Of a stretch of 64,000 bases of DNA, positions 54,826 through 64,000 are shown in pieces (position 1 is the stretch's first letter; the number at the start of each line of letters is the position of its first letter). Where the stretch lies: assembly GCF_000150275.1 (NCBI RefSeq), contig NW_002060949.1, forward strand, positions 2,105,836-2,169,835, in the 5' to 3' direction. The notes beneath the pieces are model-generated. The model was not told where the DNA came from and did no database searches. It saw only the letters and a program-made list of their open reading frames with translations. The position numbers and the translations under genes were made by a program. The DNA comes from Trichoplax adhaerens (Eukaryota > Animalia > Placozoa).

Positions 54826-57061
54826 ATTTCTATGTAAGTATAATCACGAAAGTGTATTCTTGGTTACAAAGTATAAAGCCTCATTAAAGCTACTAAGGAT
54901 AAGAAATACCAATTTTATGCGATCTGCTCTGTCCGCTCTTTGCAGCATTAATGTAGTAAAATGTTAGATTAATACTTAGCACTGTGCGATTCAACTGAGA
55001 TAATACTACGTAATTATTATCTAATCTATCTACAAACCTATCTATATGTATTTGATAAAAGAAATTTGGGGTGTATCATGATAAATAACGTAGAAGTTGA
55101 TATCAAGTTAGAATTAATCAAATTCGTGATGGATCTAGCATAACTATAGCATCGCTAATTGACTCTTAATGGAAAAATTTTACGATTTGTAAGAAATTTA
55201 ATTCTTCCTAGCCCTTTGTATGCTGTGCTACAGAAAGGTGATCTCACTACTTTTATTATTGAATTTATGGAAATAAGTGGTGTTGACAGTTATTGCATAA
55301 AGGTGGTTAAGGCAAATTGTGTAAATGTAGTTATGATACATTACACATAATTATAATACGTATATCGTAAAGGCTATGCGTACTTCTATTTAGTTCTTAT
55401 TTTTGCCGATAAACTATTTTATAAGTAGCTGATTAATACTTGCAGATGGTTTCTTGCAGCTAATTTAATTCTTATCAAGCGCTATATCAGTACAGAAATG
55501 CTGCATATTTTAACCTCTGATAATGTTTGACAATCACATTAGGAGTAAATATTCTAATTTTTCCATCCAGCTCAAAGCTATGCGTTCGGAGTGGGTTATT
55601 AGATCAATGTTGATGCAACTGATTGACAGTTATCCCACTACAATATTTTAATTAGAATCGTGTTGCATTATTTTCTGCTTAATAGTTCAGCATGGTATGC
55701 TACAATAACTTAAAAATTATTCATGGCAGTATTCATAGTGTGTACAGTGGGTGCTGGTACTAAGTACGTCTCTAGACCACAAAATAACAGTTTATCATGC
55801 AGTAATCGACTCAGTCTGTTTCATTCTAGTCGCATAATTGTATTCTATGTTCCTTTTTTAGCAGTGTAACTAGCATTTGCCAACGCACAGTATAGTACAA
55901 TGAAATCGATATTATAGATAACATATTAAATTAATATTTAAATTCAACTGAATTGTCAGGAATTGCTCATTGATTCACAGAGGAGGAAAAATCTTTTAAT
56001 GAAAAGATTTCATTTAAGATAATAAACATATCCTGGTGACTAAAATAATCAATCGATCGCGGGATAGAAAAATTTAAAATATTTATCGGCATGTTTACAT
56101 TTAATTATAGTAAAAATATCCAACGTTAAATTCTAATGTAGCTTGAGATAATGCCCTTAAAATTTTCATTAACTGATGTAATCATCGACATGCAATATAT
56201 AAATAATAATAAAATACTGTAGTACAGCCTCAAAATTACATTCCTATACGATAATAAATCTACCTCATACATAGATATTTCTACTACATTTATTACGCTA
56301 AGATTAGCTAACTATTTTAGGTTTGTTTATGAGTCAGTGATAAATTATACAGTAAACTAAAAAGTGTCAATATATTACGCGAAGTCTAACGAGCGAGGGA
56401 TCGACTAGTAATTTGGAACAATTGCATCATTTATCGTATCGGCCATTAGTAATTGAATGATCTTGTATCTACGATATTTATGCCGTACAAGGTGCCGGTA
56501 TCCTCACTCAGGATTTTAATATTCGCTGATTAACTCAACTTTCGAGCATAAACTAAATTTAATAACCAATTCTCCTTATCAGTGAGTAGATCCAGCAATA
56601 GTTATTGGTGTTGAACCATATCTTTATTAGGGATTAAATACAGCGATAATCTGTTGTTAACACCATAATATTACTTTGTTATACGTGTACATGAACATGC
56701 ATATGATTTCATTACCTAATGTCAGGTATTGTAAGATACGTTATCCATATTAATAGCAGTTTAAGCAGACTACAGTGGTATGAATACCTTTTTTTAAAAC
56801 TACATTGTAGCCAGCTCTACGTAGTTGCAGTTTTTTTTTACCTCGTATTACAACTTAGAATGATATATATGGCAACTTTTATAACTACTGTAATTAGTTA
56901 ATTTGGAAGAGGAATGCTCTCATACTAAGTGTTAGATATCTAATATACCTGACTGTAAATATTAACGGCATAAATGTGTGTATATGTAACGTATACAGGG
57001 GAAAAGAGTAGAGTACAATCAAAGTGTGAGCTATATTGTCCTAGTATCGATGATATAAACT

Positions 57062-57126
57062 GTAACCATCAATTATGCATTTTGCCAACATCAAATGGAT
57101 TTCAAATGCACAACTTCATTAGCAGT
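57062..57126 (-). promoter_or_regulatory. Eukaryotic type-II SECIS element in the 3' UTR of PRXL2C-like copy 1
   Basis: Minus strand reads ATGA-agttgtgcattt-g-AAA-tccatttgatgttggc-a-aaatgcataatt-GA. This gives the AUGA/GA core, a 12-bp helix, an unpaired AAA and a cca/tgg mini-stem, about 90 nt after the stop codon. Confidence 0.9.
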
Positions 57127-57206
57127 TTAGTATTATCAGCACTTGGACATTTTAAGCTTTAGATAGCTATAACTAAGTTTTACCAGTAAATGCGGTCCTC
57201 CTTTGA

Positions 57207-60200
57207 TTAATGTTGAGTGAAATTAATGTTTGCTACGTTTGCTACAGTAAGCAATTTGTTTATCGGGGTGTGATCAAACGTTCCGATATCAGTATGGAAG
57301 TATTTCAAGATATTACCTGAAAATAGTAGAAGGCAGGAAAGTAAATATCTACTTTTCATGATTATAGAACTTTGATAATTAATTGATTTTAAAAACAAGA
57401 GTATTCTTAAAATTATGTTCGGATAATTAGAAATAATCTTCGAATAGAAAAGAGATTTATCGTATTTCAATAAATTCATAAAGCAATACTTACCAGGTCC
57501 GACTACAAGTTGTCCACCTTGCTGCGTAACTTTACCTTGAAATCTCATCGATTTGATACCTCTCCATATCGACTTGGCTAGGCCTGATAATTCAGATGAT
57601 TTGATATGTTCTGACCCTATATCAAAGATTTTTATTTTTCAATTTTATGACCCATATCGAGTTACTCAAGGGCTACTAGCTACAAATTAATTGTTTGCTT
57701 TGCAATGTCATTACTTGGTGCTGCATGTGCAAGGGTTGTTGCCATGCCTAATTTTGAATAGATGGTCCTCTGTGGATCGCAGTACATATCATGGTTATAG
57801 CCAGTTTCCTGACGAAATTTCTAGTTATTCAAAAGAAGGGCCATAACGGATTATTTAATTTGAGCGGTTTTCCAATTACAAATATGAGTTATATTTGTAG
57901 CATAGTAGGGAAATTATTTAAGAGGACGTTATTGGCTGGTCACCTTTATAAAGTTAGGCTTTCCACACCCAATTACTATAAGTCGAACGTTGGCTTCCTA
58001 TAAAATTATTCAACAGTAATGATAGTAGCATAAATTAACCTTAAGAAAAGCGTAAGACCTCTTAGAATACTTATATACACAGCAAGATTTTAATCGAAGA
58101 ATTATATTCTAGAATGCAAGAATGAGCAATTAGTTTTTGAAAATATACTCATCAGGACTCCTTCTGCATAATATTATAACCTAAGCTTCTTGCGTTGAAT
58201 TAATCGACTATGGAATCAAAACATTCGATACTCGTACACAATGATTATATTTCCGCATAGCATTTAAGGTAGTGATAAATTTAATATTAATATGATAACT
58301 GATAGCTAGGGTATTTTATCGTTTCTTTCACTGGATATTATGGTAATTTATATTTATAAATACTGAATTTTTAACAATCTTTATCATTTACTATCTTCAT
58401 TAAATTGATTTATAGCTCACTAAGAGCATAATATACATTAGTAAATTTCTGTAGATAAAAATTTTGTGGATATATAATCTTAAGAAAATATATAGAATAT
58501 TTTGATGTGAGAGCTTGCATCATTCCACCACGAACTGAGTTATCCTGTATTGGTTTTACTAACCGCTAAAGATTCTTGCGGTATTTTGGCCAAATCTATC
58601 CATAAAGTAGAAAGAAATGAAAATAAGATTTCAATATTATGATAATTACTGCACAGCGTTTGTGAATAGTTTCGACCATTATGTACGATAATAACAATTC
58701 ATGAATATTTGATATCCATAATTCTTTAATAGTAATTAAAATACTTTGATAATGATTTTTGTACAGTAAGTACTCGATATTGATTACAGCTAATTTAAAA
58801 TTTTAACGTTGTAATGATTGCCATTTTAAAAAACAAATCAAAAGAAGTTGGATAGGAAATGCCCTGTTATTATTATATAGTATATAGGATCAAAAATTAA
58901 TTAAGAGTGAAAGAAAATGTACAATAAATTATTAGCTAGATTCACACTTTAATTCATTTAATAGCATGTACGGTGTGCGCTAACTTAGAATTGTCATAGT
59001 ATCAAAATATTACTCTAATCAATAAATTAATTTATGTCACCAACAATTTAATACATCTATATATACCCTACTACAAATAAATCTGCAACAGCATATTAAA
59101 AGAGTATGCAGTAGGTTGAATTAACTCGTCCTAATTTCGGACTATATATTCATAAGAACTTATTTACAAGGTTATTTATAGGGAGTACGGAAAGGTTAGA
59201 AAAATAATTTAGTTTAGATTCGTGCTATCTCATAGATTTACCTTCGACATATTCTTTACATACGTATCAGAGGAAATGCTTTCCACGATATTTGTGTTCA
59301 TAAAGGAGTATAAATTATAAGAATTCTATCAATTTTTAGGATAGTTAAAGAATAATAACTAAACGAAAGTTTTAAATTAGCACAGTAAGATTAATCCGCT
59401 GCTTTAAAATATATAGTGTGTCGTTAATTTACATTACTTTATAGAGTAATACTAATACTAAGAATAAGGTCATTACAGGACACTGTATTAGACATTTATG
59501 TCTAGAATGTTCTGATAAATATTGATTTGATTTTTAACGCAGCTTACGTGCTTATCATATTTTGTTCTTAAAAGATGTCATATAAGGAAAGGGATGTAGT
59601 TAGTACCGTAAAATGTGATTCTATAGTGGTATAATTATAGAAGCTATCCGAAAGTGATCAAAACCGTATTTGAAATCGCAAAGAAGTCTAACTTCTACAG
59701 TAATAATTAATGTATTGCGCATAAGCCTTGTGCTTCGGTCTTACAGTTCTAAACTAGAGATTACTATACAGATACTACTGCCAGCAGAAGTTAAACTTAA
59801 TGATAAAAATTCTTGACGGATATCATCGTCACGAAGTCAGTGGATCACGAAAGTTGATAGACGAGGAACTACAAGAAAATTAAGGCTGATACAGTATTTC
59901 CAATGCAATTTACGTTCTATCGAAAGTTAATAGTGTATCCTATAACACCCCTAATCAGGCAAATATCGATAATATTATCGGTATAGAGAATAGAATTATC
60001 TTCAAACTTGGCGTATTCTTGTCTATCGTAAATAAATAGCGTATTCTACTGTACCTAATCAAGCAAATATCGATATACAGAACAGGGTTGTCTTCAGACT
60101 TGATATATTTTTGTCAAACTAAGTGAACTGGTTATGCCTTTAAGATTATAAATTTTAATTAGTATAATTGTCTCATCTGCAAGATTTGAAGCCTCAAGTG

Positions 60201-60832
60201 TTAGACTCATTGTCTATTTGCTGAAAGTAAACATCTTATCATTTTATAACTACCCTAGTTAATAATTATGATCAGCCAATGCTACAGATTATATGCTTAT
60301 TAATGGGGTAATTATTATTTTATTTTTCGGAAATTAGTGGTGTTCGCTAGACTCTATATATGATCTACGTATAGTGTATCTTTAACGGTTTAAATCACGT
60401 CTGACGTTTATTTTAGACTAGAGAGAAGTGTAGAACCAGTTTACCAGCATCGTCACTGTCTACTTTAGTAGTAAGATACTAGATAGTGTATAATGTATGA
60501 CATAAAACAGAGTGCAAAATAGTTATTTTGGATAAAATGGTATTTCGTGTTTCCTTTCAAAATTCAATTAGAGCGTATAGATAAGCAATCGTAATTTCAT
60601 ATCTTTGTATAGGATGTCTAAAGAAAGATTAAAGCAACATTTAACTATCTTAAGAGTGTAATAAACGTACACGAACGAAAACGATGATGCTTAACTGATC
60701 CCTGTAAAGATCTCCAAATTTTAGAGTAGCACCATTTTCGTCAAACACTGGTAATCCATCAATTTTGGACCATTCGAGTTGTTTCTCGTCTGTCACCTCA
60801 GCGGAAATTTGATTGGTGTCGACTCCTGCCAT
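57207..60832 (-). CDS. PRXL2C: PRXL2C/AAED1-like (SelU family, AhpC-TSA thioredoxin fold) selenoprotein, copy 1, ~207 aa, Sec at residue 58
   Basis: Exons 60832-60671, 59278-59242 (HFL-TGA-YVCKEYVE), 58595-58564, 57997-57944, 57820-57715, 57616-57494 and 57316-57207 total 624 nt with all phases compatible. Motifs IIVFVRHFLxYVCKEYVEDLAKIP, NVRLIVIGC, YCDPQRTIYSKLGM, QQGGQLVVGPGN and DHTPINKLL match the AAED1 family. Confidence 0.92.
59950..60115. repeat. Two-copy diverged direct repeat in intron 1 of PRXL2C-like copy 1
   Basis: cctaatca.gcaaatatcgata...tcttca.acttg..tatt.ttgtc near 59950 and 60054. Confidence 0.7.
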
Positions 60833-62280
60833 TGCGGAAAGGCTGAAAATAGCCACACAATTTGATTTATTAACCTTGGGTCTACTCGTATATTGGACTG
60901 CAACTAATTAACGGATCAGTAATGCTGTCAAGTTGGTCCACTAAAGCTACACTAAACTCGTTTGGGTGCAACAAGTGGGGTGCAGGTACCTAGCCGACTA
61001 CTCGTATATTATACGTGTAGCCCCTCGCTCTCTTCGCTTTATAAAATCCTATATGCGTTCAGTATGAGGTTGACAAGGGACTACTTAAAAACCAGGAAGC
61101 TGAAATTGGCTTACCCGAATAGCTATCAATAGAACACCAACTGCGGGCATTCAGTTATTAACCTATTATGAGAATACAAGCACTAGATTATGCTCATACT
61201 AGAGGATTGTGATACAGTATACACTGTACTATATTTCAAGTTGAGAGATTTAATGCAGTATGGACAAGTACGCTGGCCGTGTGGATGGACCATTGTATTT
61301 TTTCTTGGCACTGTATAAGAGATTTTTTCGGTCCTTAATTCCTTTCATAGACACCCTTATATTGGATGATTGCTAGAGGTACTGATTTCATGCTATACAA
61401 GTAATACAACGGTTTCTTAGCATTCTTGAAAGGTTGTACGTAGTAATTATTGCATACATCTAACCAATTTACAGCTAAGCGCCTGGTTGTTAAAAAATTT
61501 ACTCGTGACGTAAATCGTAAACTTACGACGAGATCGAAGGGAATAAAGTGAAAGGTTATCACTGGCTGGTGTGACTACTGTAGGACATAATCGAGGGCAC
61601 ATACTGTAATACAGATGATGGTAGGGAGGGTTTTAAATTACCTTCAGTTAAGCAATTTGTTGTACCCATAACGGGAAGAGGTAGCGTCTTTTACCTCAAT
61701 TAATCGACTGTTAGCGAGAATGCTTAGGAGTGACCAAGGCTGATTTAAAAATTGTTGTTTTCACACATGTCCAAAAACCGGTGCAGTTGGATTCACTTTT
61801 TACCGTCTAATAACTACTTACGTTTTAATCATTCTTTATTAGGAATTAAATGTAGCGACAAGCTACTGTACTTATGCAAGCTATAATGTTTTTTTGGCTT
61901 TTATGCACACATAAAACACAATTTTATTCTTATGCGCGTATATTAGATAATCAATGCAAAGCAATTGTACTAGGATTTTTCCTGACTATATTTTAGATAT
62001 ACCACGTAGTGACGTTAATATTCTGTATATCTACATTTCAGCTAGGTCTAGAATGCTACAATTCATTTTTATCATATATTACAATGTAGAAGTATACAGG
62101 TATCAAACTTTATAAACATGGAAATTAAAACACAGAAGGGTACTTCGACTAAATATTAGCGATCTACTCTATTACTGCAAACATTAGTGTCGTAAATACT
62201 ATATATTGAACGTATATGAGATGAAAAGTTGACCAAAAGCGCGAGTCATAGTGCCCAAGAATTGATAATATAAACTACAG

Positions 62281-62345
62281 TAGTCATCGGTTATACATTT
62301 TGCCAATATCAAATGGATTTCAAATGTACAACTTCATTGGTAGTT
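62281..62345 (-). promoter_or_regulatory. Eukaryotic type-II SECIS element in the 3' UTR of PRXL2C-like copy 2
   Basis: Minus strand reads ATGA-agttgtacattt-g-AAA-tccatttgatattggc-a-aaatgtataacc-GA, the same fold and position as in copy 1. Confidence 0.9.
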
Positions 62346-62426
62346 TATCATTAACAACACATGAGCGTCCGCTTTAGGCAACAATAATCAAGTGCTGTAA
62401 GAGCAGTAAACTCAGTCTTTGATCGA

Positions 62427-63755
62427 TTAATGTTTTTTAAATTCAACATTTGCTACATCGGCCATACTGAGTAATTTGTTAATTGGGGTGTGATCAAATG
62501 TACCGCCATCAATATGGAGGTATTTCAAAACATTACCTGAAATAGTAGAAAGATCCGCATCATGAACATAGCAATTTGTCAATTTTACTCTAAGATGATA
62601 CATGATCGATACTATAGCTCACAATTAAAATTACGGTGGCATAGTTACGAACAATTGTTGAAAGAATTAATACAAATTCAACCTACCAGGTCCAACTATA
62701 AGTTGTCCACCTTGCTGCTTAACATCACCTTGAGAACTCATTGATTTCATAGTTCGCCATAACGAATTTGCTAAGCCTGATGCAACAGATGATCTGACAT
62801 GTTCTGATCCTATTGTCAAGATCAATTTCTTATTCGTCTATTTTATAACCCATATCTATGCTATTAGGCTACTTAAGGTTTACTGGCTATCAATTGATGG
62901 TTCACTTTGGTATTTTATTACCTGATGCTCCAGTAGAGAGAGTTCTTATCATGCCTAGTTTGGAATAGACGGTCGTCTGTGGATCGCTGTACATATCATG
63001 CTGATAGCCAGTTACCTTACGAAAGTTCTAGTTATTGTAGAAAAAATACGTGATAGCTTATCAAATTTGAGCCGTTCGTGAACAATTTGTACAAATTGAG
63101 TTACAGTATTACAAGAGCATAAGTTTAGAGGTGTTATTGATCAATCACCTTGATGAAAGTGTGTTTGGCACATCCAATCACAGCAAGTCGAACGTTGGCT
63201 TTCTATAGTAATGATAATATAATCTTTAGAGAAGCGAAGTTTGTTGCAATGTTCATAGGTAGCACAAGGCTTTCATTGGAACAGTAGCTCATGGTATGGA
63301 TGAGGAAGAAGCAACTGTTTTACGTTCCCCACGCTGATTAGTACACACAATACCAATTTACAAGCAATCTTTCGATCAATTGGTGGATAGTATTATCAAA
63401 AACACTTTCGATCTATTTCATGATAATCTACTTGTATCATTCATTTGTGATAAATGTGTTTGTTAGTTAACTAATGACTAGGATAGTTAATCATTTTCTC
63501 TTATGCAACACTATGATGGTTTATACTTGTAAACACTAAAGTGTTGTATTCATTTAATTATTAGAATACAGGACTCGCGTAATAGACTAGAAGCAAATTT
63601 TGTACCTATCAAATATAGAATTTCAGTCGATACATAATCGTAAGAATAAATCAAAAATATTCTAATCAAGTATTTACACTCTATTGCCAATAACTGGATT
63701 ATGCAATATTAGTTTTACTAACCGCTAAAGATTCTTGCGGTATTTTAGCCAAATC
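62427..63755 (-). CDS. PRXL2C: PRXL2C/AAED1-like copy 2 (tandem paralog); last five exons only, 5' exons lie beyond the window
   Basis: Exons ~63755-63724 (DLAKIPQESLA), 63202-63149, ~63027-62922, ~62809-62687 and ~62536-62427 (GNVLKYLHIDGGTFDHTPINKLLSMADVANVEFKKH*) have the same structure as copy 1, with no frameshift seen. Confidence 0.88.
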
Positions 63756-64000
63756 TATTAATAAAAAAGAAGAAATAAAAATGTGATTTTAAATACCAAG
63801 AGAACATTGCAGTGCATTTATGAATACAGTCTTTGCAATCACGTATAATAACTGTTATTGTTGAATACGAGTGTACTGTATATGTTTCTTCGACGACGTA
63901 AAAAATACAATGATTTCTATGCAGTCATTGTTTATCATTGATGAAAATTAATTTAAAATTTAATGCTGTAAGAATTGATATTTTTTTAAAGACAAATTAA

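What the first reader, a model, noticed from the sequence alone, without database searches (positions are those of the whole stretch)
57062..60832. Hidden selenoprotein: PRXL2C/AAED1-like gene with in-frame TGA (UxxC) in a 37-nt exon plus a 3' UTR SECIS
Seen: a small exon at 59278-59242, flanked by aag|...|gtaaat, reads cat ttc ctc TGA tac gta tgt aaa gaa tat gtc gaa g. The TGA (59269-59267) sits exactly at the first Cys of the HFLCYICKEYVE redox motif of mammalian PRXL2C. The exon is needed to keep the frame between its neighbours, all downstream exons are intact, and a canonical SECIS follows the stop. Known: PRXL2A/B/C are the Cys-type relatives of the SelU selenoprotein family, and Sec forms occur in some non-mammalian lineages, so the family is not new. 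This locus is nonetheless invisible to ORF finding and likely to be mis-annotated. Inference: UGA is decoded as selenocysteine, giving a UxxC oxidoreductase.
Basis: partly seen in the sequence, partly recalled or inferred. Interest (0 to 1): 0.9.

Follow-up and report, generated by a model that had tools for sequence, protein, structure and literature searches.

The report
Known Trichoplax selenoprotein SelU2/PRXL2C gene
This is a real seven-exon gene of the placozoan Trichoplax adhaerens for a PRXL2C/AAED1-type redox protein that carries selenocysteine in place of the first active-site cysteine, but it was already catalogued in 2012, so only the faulty public gene models are left to fix.

Summary
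On the minus strand there is a seven-exon, 207-codon gene, with AG/GT at every intron. Its 37-nt exon 2 reads HFL-TGA-YVCKEYVE. The TGA falls on the first Cys of the FLCYVCKEYVED motif in PRXL2C from echinoderm, hemichordate and frog. A form-2 SECIS hairpin begins 87 nt after the stop codon.

A tandem paralogue 5 kb upstream keeps the same exons, the same TGA and the same SECIS, with one compensatory base-pair change. Between the two copies, dN/dS downstream of the TGA is 0.36.

The genome has tRNA-Sec, SepSecS, SPS and eEFSec, plus eleven deiodinase-family matches, each read through one TGA.

The genome is Trichoplax adhaerens. Jiang et al. 2012 (PMC3473315) list Ta.SelU2_a and Ta.SelU2_b on (-)scaffold_7, which is this contig, and name Trichoplax as the only Sec-bearing SelU2 (now SELENOU2/PRXL2C). 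The finding is therefore real but already known. This scan reached the same verdict for the neighbouring copy (s1-772793).

Two things are still useful. Both public protein models, TRIADDRAFT_58024 and the Trichoplax sp. H2 'AAED1', avoid the UGA and so lack the redox motif.

The parts
60671..60832 (-). Exon 1, from ATG 60832-60830; 54 codons ending ...SIIVFVR
   Evidence: Identical to the N-terminus of public models P0001 and P0002. 77% nt identity to the paralogue.
59242..59278 (-). Exon 2, 37 nt, HFL-U-YVCKEYVE; Sec codon TGA at 59269-59267; UxxC redox motif
   Evidence: It is an isolated 90%-identical island (59293-59234) between the paralogues, inside introns that otherwise do not align. 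Skipping it gives a stop in exon 3.
58564..58595 (-). Exon 3, 32 nt, (D)LAKIPQESLA
   Evidence: The LAKIP motif is invariant in the 11 of 12 aligned proteins that include this stretch.
57944..57997 (-). Exon 4, EANVRLIVIGCGKPNFIK
57715..57820 (-). Exon 5, KFRQETGYNHDMYCDPQRTIYSKLGMATTLAHAAP
   Evidence: AhpC-TSA_2, 26.4 bits for this exon alone
57494..57616 (-). Exon 6, ...QGKVTQQGGQLVVGP
57207..57316 (-). Exon 7, with stop TAA at 57209-57207
   Evidence: It matches the C-terminus of the H2 model P0001.
57058..57127 (-). Form-2 SECIS element in the 3' UTR: helix I, AUGA 57119-57116, an 11-12 bp helix II, unpaired AAA 57102-57100, a CCA/UGG mini-stem, and GA 57070-57069. The AUGA starts 87 nt after the stop and 537 nt (in mRNA) after the UGA.
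62148..64000 (-). 3' part of the tandem paralogue (the other Ta.SelU2 copy). Its SECIS is at 62347-62271 and its exons 4-7 lie within 62430-63202. Its exons 1-3, including HFL-TGA-YICKEYVE, lie beyond the window end, at window-equivalent 63723-65639 (L007 2723-4639).

Best explanation
This is one of the two tandem SelU2 (SELENOU2/PRXL2C/AAED1) selenoprotein genes of Trichoplax adhaerens, listed in 2012 as Ta.SelU2_a and Ta.SelU2_b. The spliced mRNA carries an in-frame UGA in exon 2. A form-2 SECIS in the 3' UTR, about 540 nt downstream, recruits the eukaryotic Sec-insertion machinery (SBP2, eEFSec and Sec-tRNA), so the UGA is read as selenocysteine. The product is a 207-residue thioredoxin-fold protein of the AhpC/TSA_2 type with a U-x-x-C redox centre. 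In this centre Sec is the attacking residue, and the Cys three positions later resolves it through a selenenylsulfide. Shown here: the gene structure, the homology, the position of the UGA, the SECIS structure and its conservation, purifying selection downstream of the UGA, and the presence of most of the machinery. Inferred, not shown: transcription and splicing, actual Sec insertion, and the chemistry and substrate.
For: Gene model: seven exons, all AG/GT, 624-nt frame. Family: the public model P0001 is identical to this gene outside exon 2. It scores 70.4 bits on PF13911 AhpC-TSA_2, and all its non-placozoan hits are named peroxiredoxin-like 2C or AAED1, or are their unnamed Xenopus/frog equivalents, at E 5e-42 to 1e-17, with one 120-aa fragment at 3e-8. 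The TGA aligns with the first Cys of FLCY(V/T)CKEYVED. A paralogue 5 kb upstream keeps the seven-exon structure and TGA at the same codon. dN/dS between the copies is 0.21 upstream and 0.36 downstream of the TGA, with synonymous and non-synonymous rates differing at Fisher p = 3.6e-5. Exon 2 is an isolated conserved island between the copies. SECIS: fold z = -3.4; a full-length SECIS_1 match, 25.7 bits, E 0.0022; near-identity between the copies inside a diverged 3' UTR, with a G-C to A-U compensatory change in helix II; pattern scan 3 hits against 0.09 expected. Machinery: tRNA-Sec at 78 bits with anticodon TCA, SepSecS, SPS with an in-frame TGA, eEFSec, and 11 deiodinase-family matches with one TGA each. 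Identity: TRIADDRAFT_58024 lies on a contig of 5,881,857 bases, the length of this contig. C1408 corresponds to scaffold_7, shown by the strand pattern of six deiodinase genes, + + - - - +. Jiang et al. 2012 list Ta.SelU2_a and Ta.SelU2_b on (-)scaffold_7, and these two copies are the only AhpC-TSA_2 loci on that contig.
Against: A search for ORFs truncated at the UGA in the protein collection was blank. The Rfam SECIS_1 score is below the gathering threshold, and the paralogue's SECIS got no Rfam match at all. A genome-wide SECIS_1 search did not list this site. SBP2 was not sought. The paper's figures are not held as text, so the match to Ta.SelU2_a/b rests on scaffold, strand, family and copy number, not on a sequence comparison.
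Confidence: 0.9

Rival explanations
1. The TGA is a true stop. The locus is a pseudogene or a nonsense allele, and only a 57-residue peptide is made, or the mRNA is degraded.
For: No expression data were obtained here. Both public annotations avoid the codon.
Against: Two paralogues diverged to about 68% amino-acid identity, yet both keep TGA at the same codon. Both keep all downstream exons open, with splice sites intact in copy A and collinear exon matches in copy B, and dN/dS is 0.36. Both keep a SECIS, with a compensatory change. The codon sits exactly on the catalytic Cys position.
Confidence: 0.04
2. Assembly or sequencing error: the real codon is TGC or TGT, and the protein is an ordinary Cys-type PRXL2C.
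For: All non-placozoan PRXL2C proteins found have Cys here.
Against: The same TGA occurs independently in the paralogue. A conserved SECIS would have no reason to exist after a Cys-type gene. The Trichoplax sp. H2 annotation also had to replace this exon with a false one, which suggests the H2 assembly carries a stop there too. Jiang et al. 2012 report the Sec form.
Confidence: 0.02
3. Exon 2 is skipped or replaced by another exon, as in the public models, giving a protein without the redox motif.
For: The H2 model uses a 34-nt exon of the same phase (YLTTKVDSDDA, from about 60478-60445 in intron 1). TRIADDRAFT_58024 reads exon 2 in another frame.
Against: Simple skipping puts a stop in exon 3. 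The substitute exons are not conserved between the paralogues and lie outside the conserved islands. They also remove the motif that is invariant in the family. These are typical products of gene predictors that must avoid an in-frame stop.
Confidence: 0.04

Closest known systems
Ta.SelU2_a / Ta.SelU2_b of Trichoplax adhaerens (Jiang et al. 2012, BMC Genomics 13:446, PMC3473315)
   Same: Same species, same scaffold (scaffold_7 = contig C1408), same strand, same family (SelU2 = C9orf21-like = AAED1/PRXL2C), two copies, Sec form with a SECIS.
   Different: Nothing known to differ; it is taken to be the same gene. Which copy is _a and which is _b cannot be told, because the paper's figures are not held as text.
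Vertebrate and deuterostome PRXL2C / AAED1 (SELENOU2), Cys form
   Same: 40-48% identity over 83-98% of the length among the full-length isoforms. AhpC-TSA_2 domain. The motifs VFVRxFLCYxCKEYVEDLAKIP and QQGGxLVVGPG are conserved.
   Different: These have Cys where Trichoplax has Sec, and no SECIS is expected. Trichoplax has two tandem copies and a shorter C-terminus.
SELENOU1 / PRXL2A, the Sec form in fish, birds and invertebrates
   Same: Same superfamily (SelU, Prx-like2), with Sec at the first position of the UxxC motif and a 3' UTR SECIS.
   Different: A different subfamily. The Trichoplax SelU1 gene is a separate locus on C1407 (scaffold_8). In vertebrates all Sec-encoding SELENOU genes belong to SELENOU1.
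Public models TRIADDRAFT_58024 (T. adhaerens) and 'Thioredoxin-like protein AAED1' (Trichoplax sp. H2)
   Same: They cover the same locus (H1) or its orthologue (H2). Exons 1 and 4-6 are identical in both, and in H2 exons 3 and 7 are identical too.
   Different: Both lack HFLUYVCKEYVE. The H2 model substitutes YLTTKVDSDDA. The H1 model reads exon 2 out of frame, adds a false exon and has a false C-terminus.

Membership tests
SELENOU2 / PRXL2C (AAED1) subfamily of SelU | AhpC/TSA_2 (PF13911) thioredoxin-fold domain | tested here: met
   Exon 5 alone scores 26.4 bits. Public model P0001, identical outside exon 2, scores 70.4 bits against a cut-off of 27. The joined model itself was not sent to any tool.
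SELENOU2 / PRXL2C (AAED1) subfamily of SelU | Closest relatives are PRXL2C rather than PRXL2A or PRXL2B | tested here: met
   All 25 non-placozoan hits of P0001 are PRXL2C/AAED1 by name or by their UniRef name. No tree was built against PRXL2A/B.
SELENOU2 / PRXL2C (AAED1) subfamily of SelU | Redox motif F-L-C/U-Y-x-C-K-E-Y-V-E-D-LAKIP straight after the beta-strand IIVFVR | tested here: met
   Exon 2 plus the start of exon 3 read HFL-TGA-YVCKEYVE-D-LAKIP. Amphiura has HFLCYVCKEYVEDLAKIP.
Eukaryotic selenoprotein gene | In-frame UGA at a position held by Cys in homologues | tested here: met
   the same codon in the paralogue
Eukaryotic selenoprotein gene | SECIS in the 3' UTR with an AUGA / GA quartet, a 9-13 bp helix II, unpaired AA, and helix I | tested here: met
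   SECIS_1 25.7 bits, below GA 35; 3 hits against 0.09 expected; conserved, with a compensatory pair. SECISearch3 was not available.
Eukaryotic selenoprotein gene | Genome encodes the Sec machinery (tRNA-Sec, SepSecS, SPS, eEFSec, SBP2, PSTK) | tested here: met
   tRNA-Sec, SepSecS, SPS, eEFSec. SBP2 and PSTK were not sought.
Eukaryotic selenoprotein gene | UGA-containing exon and SECIS present in mature mRNA; Sec actually inserted | not testable with these tools

The most novel reading that the evidence does not exclude
Exons 2 and 3, with about 20 nt of flanking intron, are much more alike between the two copies (90-97% nt) than the rest of the gene (72-82%). This could mark an RNA-level constraint around the UGA, such as a Sec-redefinition-type element or a splicing enhancer for the 37-nt micro-exon, or it could reflect local gene conversion. 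If it is an RNA constraint, the retention of Sec in both duplicates of the only known Sec-type PRXL2C would point to a selenium-specific chemistry that was lost elsewhere in animals.
Probability: 0.12. Interest if true: 0.35.

Novelty: already known. Interest (0 to 1): 0.15.

Why it matters
The biology is published. Trichoplax is the only reported animal with a Sec-type SELENOU2/PRXL2C, which dates the Sec-to-Cys switch of this subfamily to early animal evolution (PMC3473315). A 2026 survey still finds Sec only in SELENOU1 among vertebrates (PMC13134290). What remains is curation. Both public protein records for this locus (TRIADDRAFT_58024 and the H2 'AAED1') lack the catalytic motif, and the T. 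adhaerens record also has a wrong C-terminus. Any alignment, tree or structure built from them is therefore misleading.

Tried and rejected
1. Rfam at E <= 1 on 6 kb missed the SECIS; it appeared only in a 131-nt search.
2. The paralogue's SECIS gave no Rfam match, and a genome-wide SECIS_1 search did not list either site. Rfam SECIS_1 is therefore a weak detector here, and I relied on a pattern scan with simulated controls.
3. The bacterial selB model (TIGR00475) was inconclusive on its own. The eEFSec-specific PF21131 settled it.
4. A search with exon 1 for ORFs truncated at the UGA found nothing. The 143-aa open frame spanning exon 6, intron 6 and exon 7 found only the two public models.
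6. The third SECIS-like hit, at 15400-15359 (-), is rejected as chance: fold z = -0.9 and no SECIS_1 match.
Everything was done exon by exon or with public models, and folding of the spliced mRNA around the UGA was left out for the same reason.
Full report
**What is in the sequence**

On the minus strand of 57207-60832 there is a seven-exon gene:

| Exon | Coordinates |
|---|---|
| 1 | 60832-60671 |
| 2 | 59278-59242 |
| 3 | 58595-58564 |
| 4 | 57997-57944 |
| 5 | 57820-57715 |
| 6 | 57616-57494 |
| 7 | 57316-57207 |

Every intron begins with GT and ends with AG, and the exons add up to a 624-nt frame of 207 codons plus TAA. The exon is needed for the frame: with exon 1 joined directly to exon 3, the reading is IWPKYRKNL-stop.

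**What family it is**

Exon 5 alone nearly reaches the Pfam threshold for AhpC-TSA_2 (26.4 bits against 27).

A search with the stop-free 143-codon frame spanning exon 6, intron 6 and exon 7 returned two public models:
- TRIADDRAFT_58024 of Trichoplax adhaerens. It lies on a contig of 5,881,857 bases, which is the length of this window's contig.
- 'Thioredoxin-like protein AAED1' of Trichoplax sp. H2.

The H2 model is identical to my exons 1 and 3-7. It scores 70.4 bits on AhpC-TSA_2. Outside placozoans it finds only peroxiredoxin-like 2C / AAED1 proteins, from Amphiura, two hemichordates and many frogs, at E 5e-42 downwards.

In the alignment of these proteins, the stretch after IIVFVR is (H/N/F)F(L/Q)CY(V/T)(C/S/A)(K/I/V)EY(V/A)(E/Q)D-LAKIP. 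Amphiura has HFLCYVCKEYVED-LAKIP, which is exon 2 letter for letter, with Cys where the window has TGA.

**Both public models are wrong at this point**

- The H2 model replaces exon 2 with a 34-nt piece of intron 1 of the same phase (YLTTKVDSDDA).
- The T. adhaerens model reads exon 2 in another frame (…ESISSDTYVKNMSK), adds a false exon and ends in a false C-terminus.

**The SECIS**

Eighty-seven nt after the stop codon, and 537 nt after the UGA in the mRNA, lies a hairpin at 57127-57058. It has these parts:
- helix I of 7 bp;
- an internal loop;
- AUGA at 57119-57116;
- helix II of 11-12 bp;
- unpaired AAA at 57102-57100;
- a CCA/UGG mini-stem;
- GA at 57070-57069.

It folds as such, with z = -3.4 against shuffles.

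Rfam's SECIS_1 aligns over its full length at 25.7 bits, E 0.0022 in a 131-nt search. This is below the curated 35 bits, and the match was missed in a 6-kb search. Rfam is a weak detector here: the paralogue's element, which is nearly identical in its core, gets no match, and a genome-wide search lists neither.

I therefore wrote a simple pattern scanner. It requires ATGA, 9-13 consecutive pairs, AA just after the helix, GA, and a helix I of at least 5 bp. It gives three hits on both strands of the real window:
- one after the stop codon of this gene;
- one after the stop codon of the paralogue;
- one weak site at 15400-15359.

The mean over 100 first-order Markov simulations of the window is 0.09 hits. 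Chance does not explain a hit within 100 nt of the stop codon on the right strand, found twice.

**The paralogue as an internal control**

About 5 kb upstream, at window 62148 to window-equivalent 65647 and fetched as L007, lies a tandem copy with the same seven exons.
- Per-exon amino-acid identity is 67-100%.
- Its exon 2 reads HFL-TGA-YICKEYVE, with the same codon.
- By Nei-Gojobori counting, dN/dS is 0.21 for exon 1 and 0.36 for exons 2-7. Synonymous sites changed more often than non-synonymous ones (Fisher p = 3.6e-5). Both copies have therefore been kept as coding sequence downstream of the UGA since the duplication.
- At the DNA level, exon 2 is a 60-nt, 90%-identical island inside introns that otherwise do not align. 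The substitute exon of the H2 model lies outside every conserved block.
- The 3' UTRs are diverged and gapped except across the SECIS. There the two copies differ by one G-C to A-U compensatory pair and one G·U to G-C change in helix II, and by changes in the fourth quartet position and in helix I.

**Sec machinery and identity of the genome**

The assembly (105,631,681 bases, 1414 contigs) holds the following:

| Component | Evidence |
|---|---|
| tRNA-Sec | 78 bits, anticodon TCA |
| SepSecS | six collinear exon matches, C1407:1657848-1660407 |
| Selenophosphate synthetase | 134.8 bits, read through TGA, on C1409 |
| eEFSec | its specific fourth domain at C1414:7409278-7409521, next to a GTPase-domain match at 7411560 |
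| Deiodinase family | eleven matches, each with exactly one in-frame TGA |

SBP2 and PSTK were not sought.

The contig numbers run opposite to the JGI scaffold numbers. Four points of agreement with Table S1 of Jiang et al. 2012 support this:
- Six deiodinase matches on C1408 have strands + + - - - +, as Ta.DI_f to Ta.DI_k have on scaffold_7.
- The selenophosphate synthetase match on C1409 (+) corresponds to Ta.SPS on (+)scaffold_6.
- The strongest AhpC-TSA_2 locus, on C1407 (-), corresponds to Ta.SelU1 on (-)scaffold_8.
- The only two AhpC-TSA_2 loci on C1408 are the two copies described here, both on the minus strand.

**Comparison with what is known**

Jiang et al. 2012 list Ta.SelU2_a and Ta.SelU2_b on (-)scaffold_7. 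They define SelU2 as the C9orf21-like (AAED1) subfamily. [quoted passage not shown] Current nomenclature equates SELENOU2 with PRXL2C, and a 2026 survey finds Sec only in SELENOU1 among vertebrates.

The gene in this finding is therefore one of the two published Ta.SelU2 genes. An earlier follow-up in this scan reached the same verdict for the neighbouring copy (s1-772793). I re-derived that verdict independently from the paper's table and the contig mapping.

**Mechanism**

The following is inferred from family knowledge and not shown here. The UGA is recoded by SBP2 bound to the SECIS K-turn, together with eEFSec and Sec-tRNA. The protein is a thioredoxin-fold oxidoreductase in which Sec, at the first position of UxxC, attacks the substrate and is resolved by the Cys at +3. 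The substrate is unknown. The vertebrate SELENOU relatives have been linked to antioxidant defence, prostaglandin synthesis and regulation of glycolysis.

**Limits**

A search for ORFs truncated at the UGA was blank. The work was done exon by exon, by reference, or with public models. The paper's figures are not held as text, so the identity with Ta.SelU2_a/b rests on species, scaffold, strand, family and copy number.

**Verdict**

Novelty: already known. Interest is low, and the remaining value is correction of the public gene models.

Noticed in passing
window 59293-59234 and 58668-58455 against L007 (window-equivalent 64509-64450 and 63826-63615): Exons 2 and 3 of the two SelU2 copies are 94-97% identical at the nucleotide level, and the similarity runs about 8-15 nt into the flanking introns. 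The other exons are 72-82% identical. This could be local gene conversion or an RNA-level constraint around the UGA or the micro-exon. The numbers are too small to tell.
   Followed up: partly
window 57317-57493 (-): Intron 6 is 177 nt, a multiple of three, and has no in-frame stop. Exon 6, intron 6 and exon 7 therefore form one 143-codon open frame, and a retained intron would not break the reading frame. The paralogue's intron 6 is 153 nt and only about 60% alike, so it looks like an ordinary intron.
   Followed up: partly
window 15400-15359 (-): This is a third hit of my SECIS-like pattern (ATGA, 9-bp helix, AA, GA). Its fold is no better than shuffles (z = -0.9) and there is no SECIS_1 match. 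It is probably chance. No upstream gene was examined.
   Followed up: partly
G000:C1408:3653027-3671463, about 1.5 Mb from the window: A cluster of six deiodinase-family genes, each read through one TGA, with strands + + - - - +. It corresponds to the published Ta.DI_f to Ta.DI_k cluster.
   Followed up: partly
G000:C1413:4362937-4363113 (+): A fourth, weak AhpC-TSA_2 match (22.3 bits) on scaffold_2 that is not in the 2012 selenoprotein table. It may be a Cys-type SelU/PRXL2 relative, for example PRXL2B-like.
   Followed up: no
window 60604-60708 (+): A weak, below-threshold Rfam match to snoRNA snR66 (26.7 bits against 65, E 0.58). It overlaps the end of exon 1 on the opposite strand and is taken as chance.
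   Followed up: no
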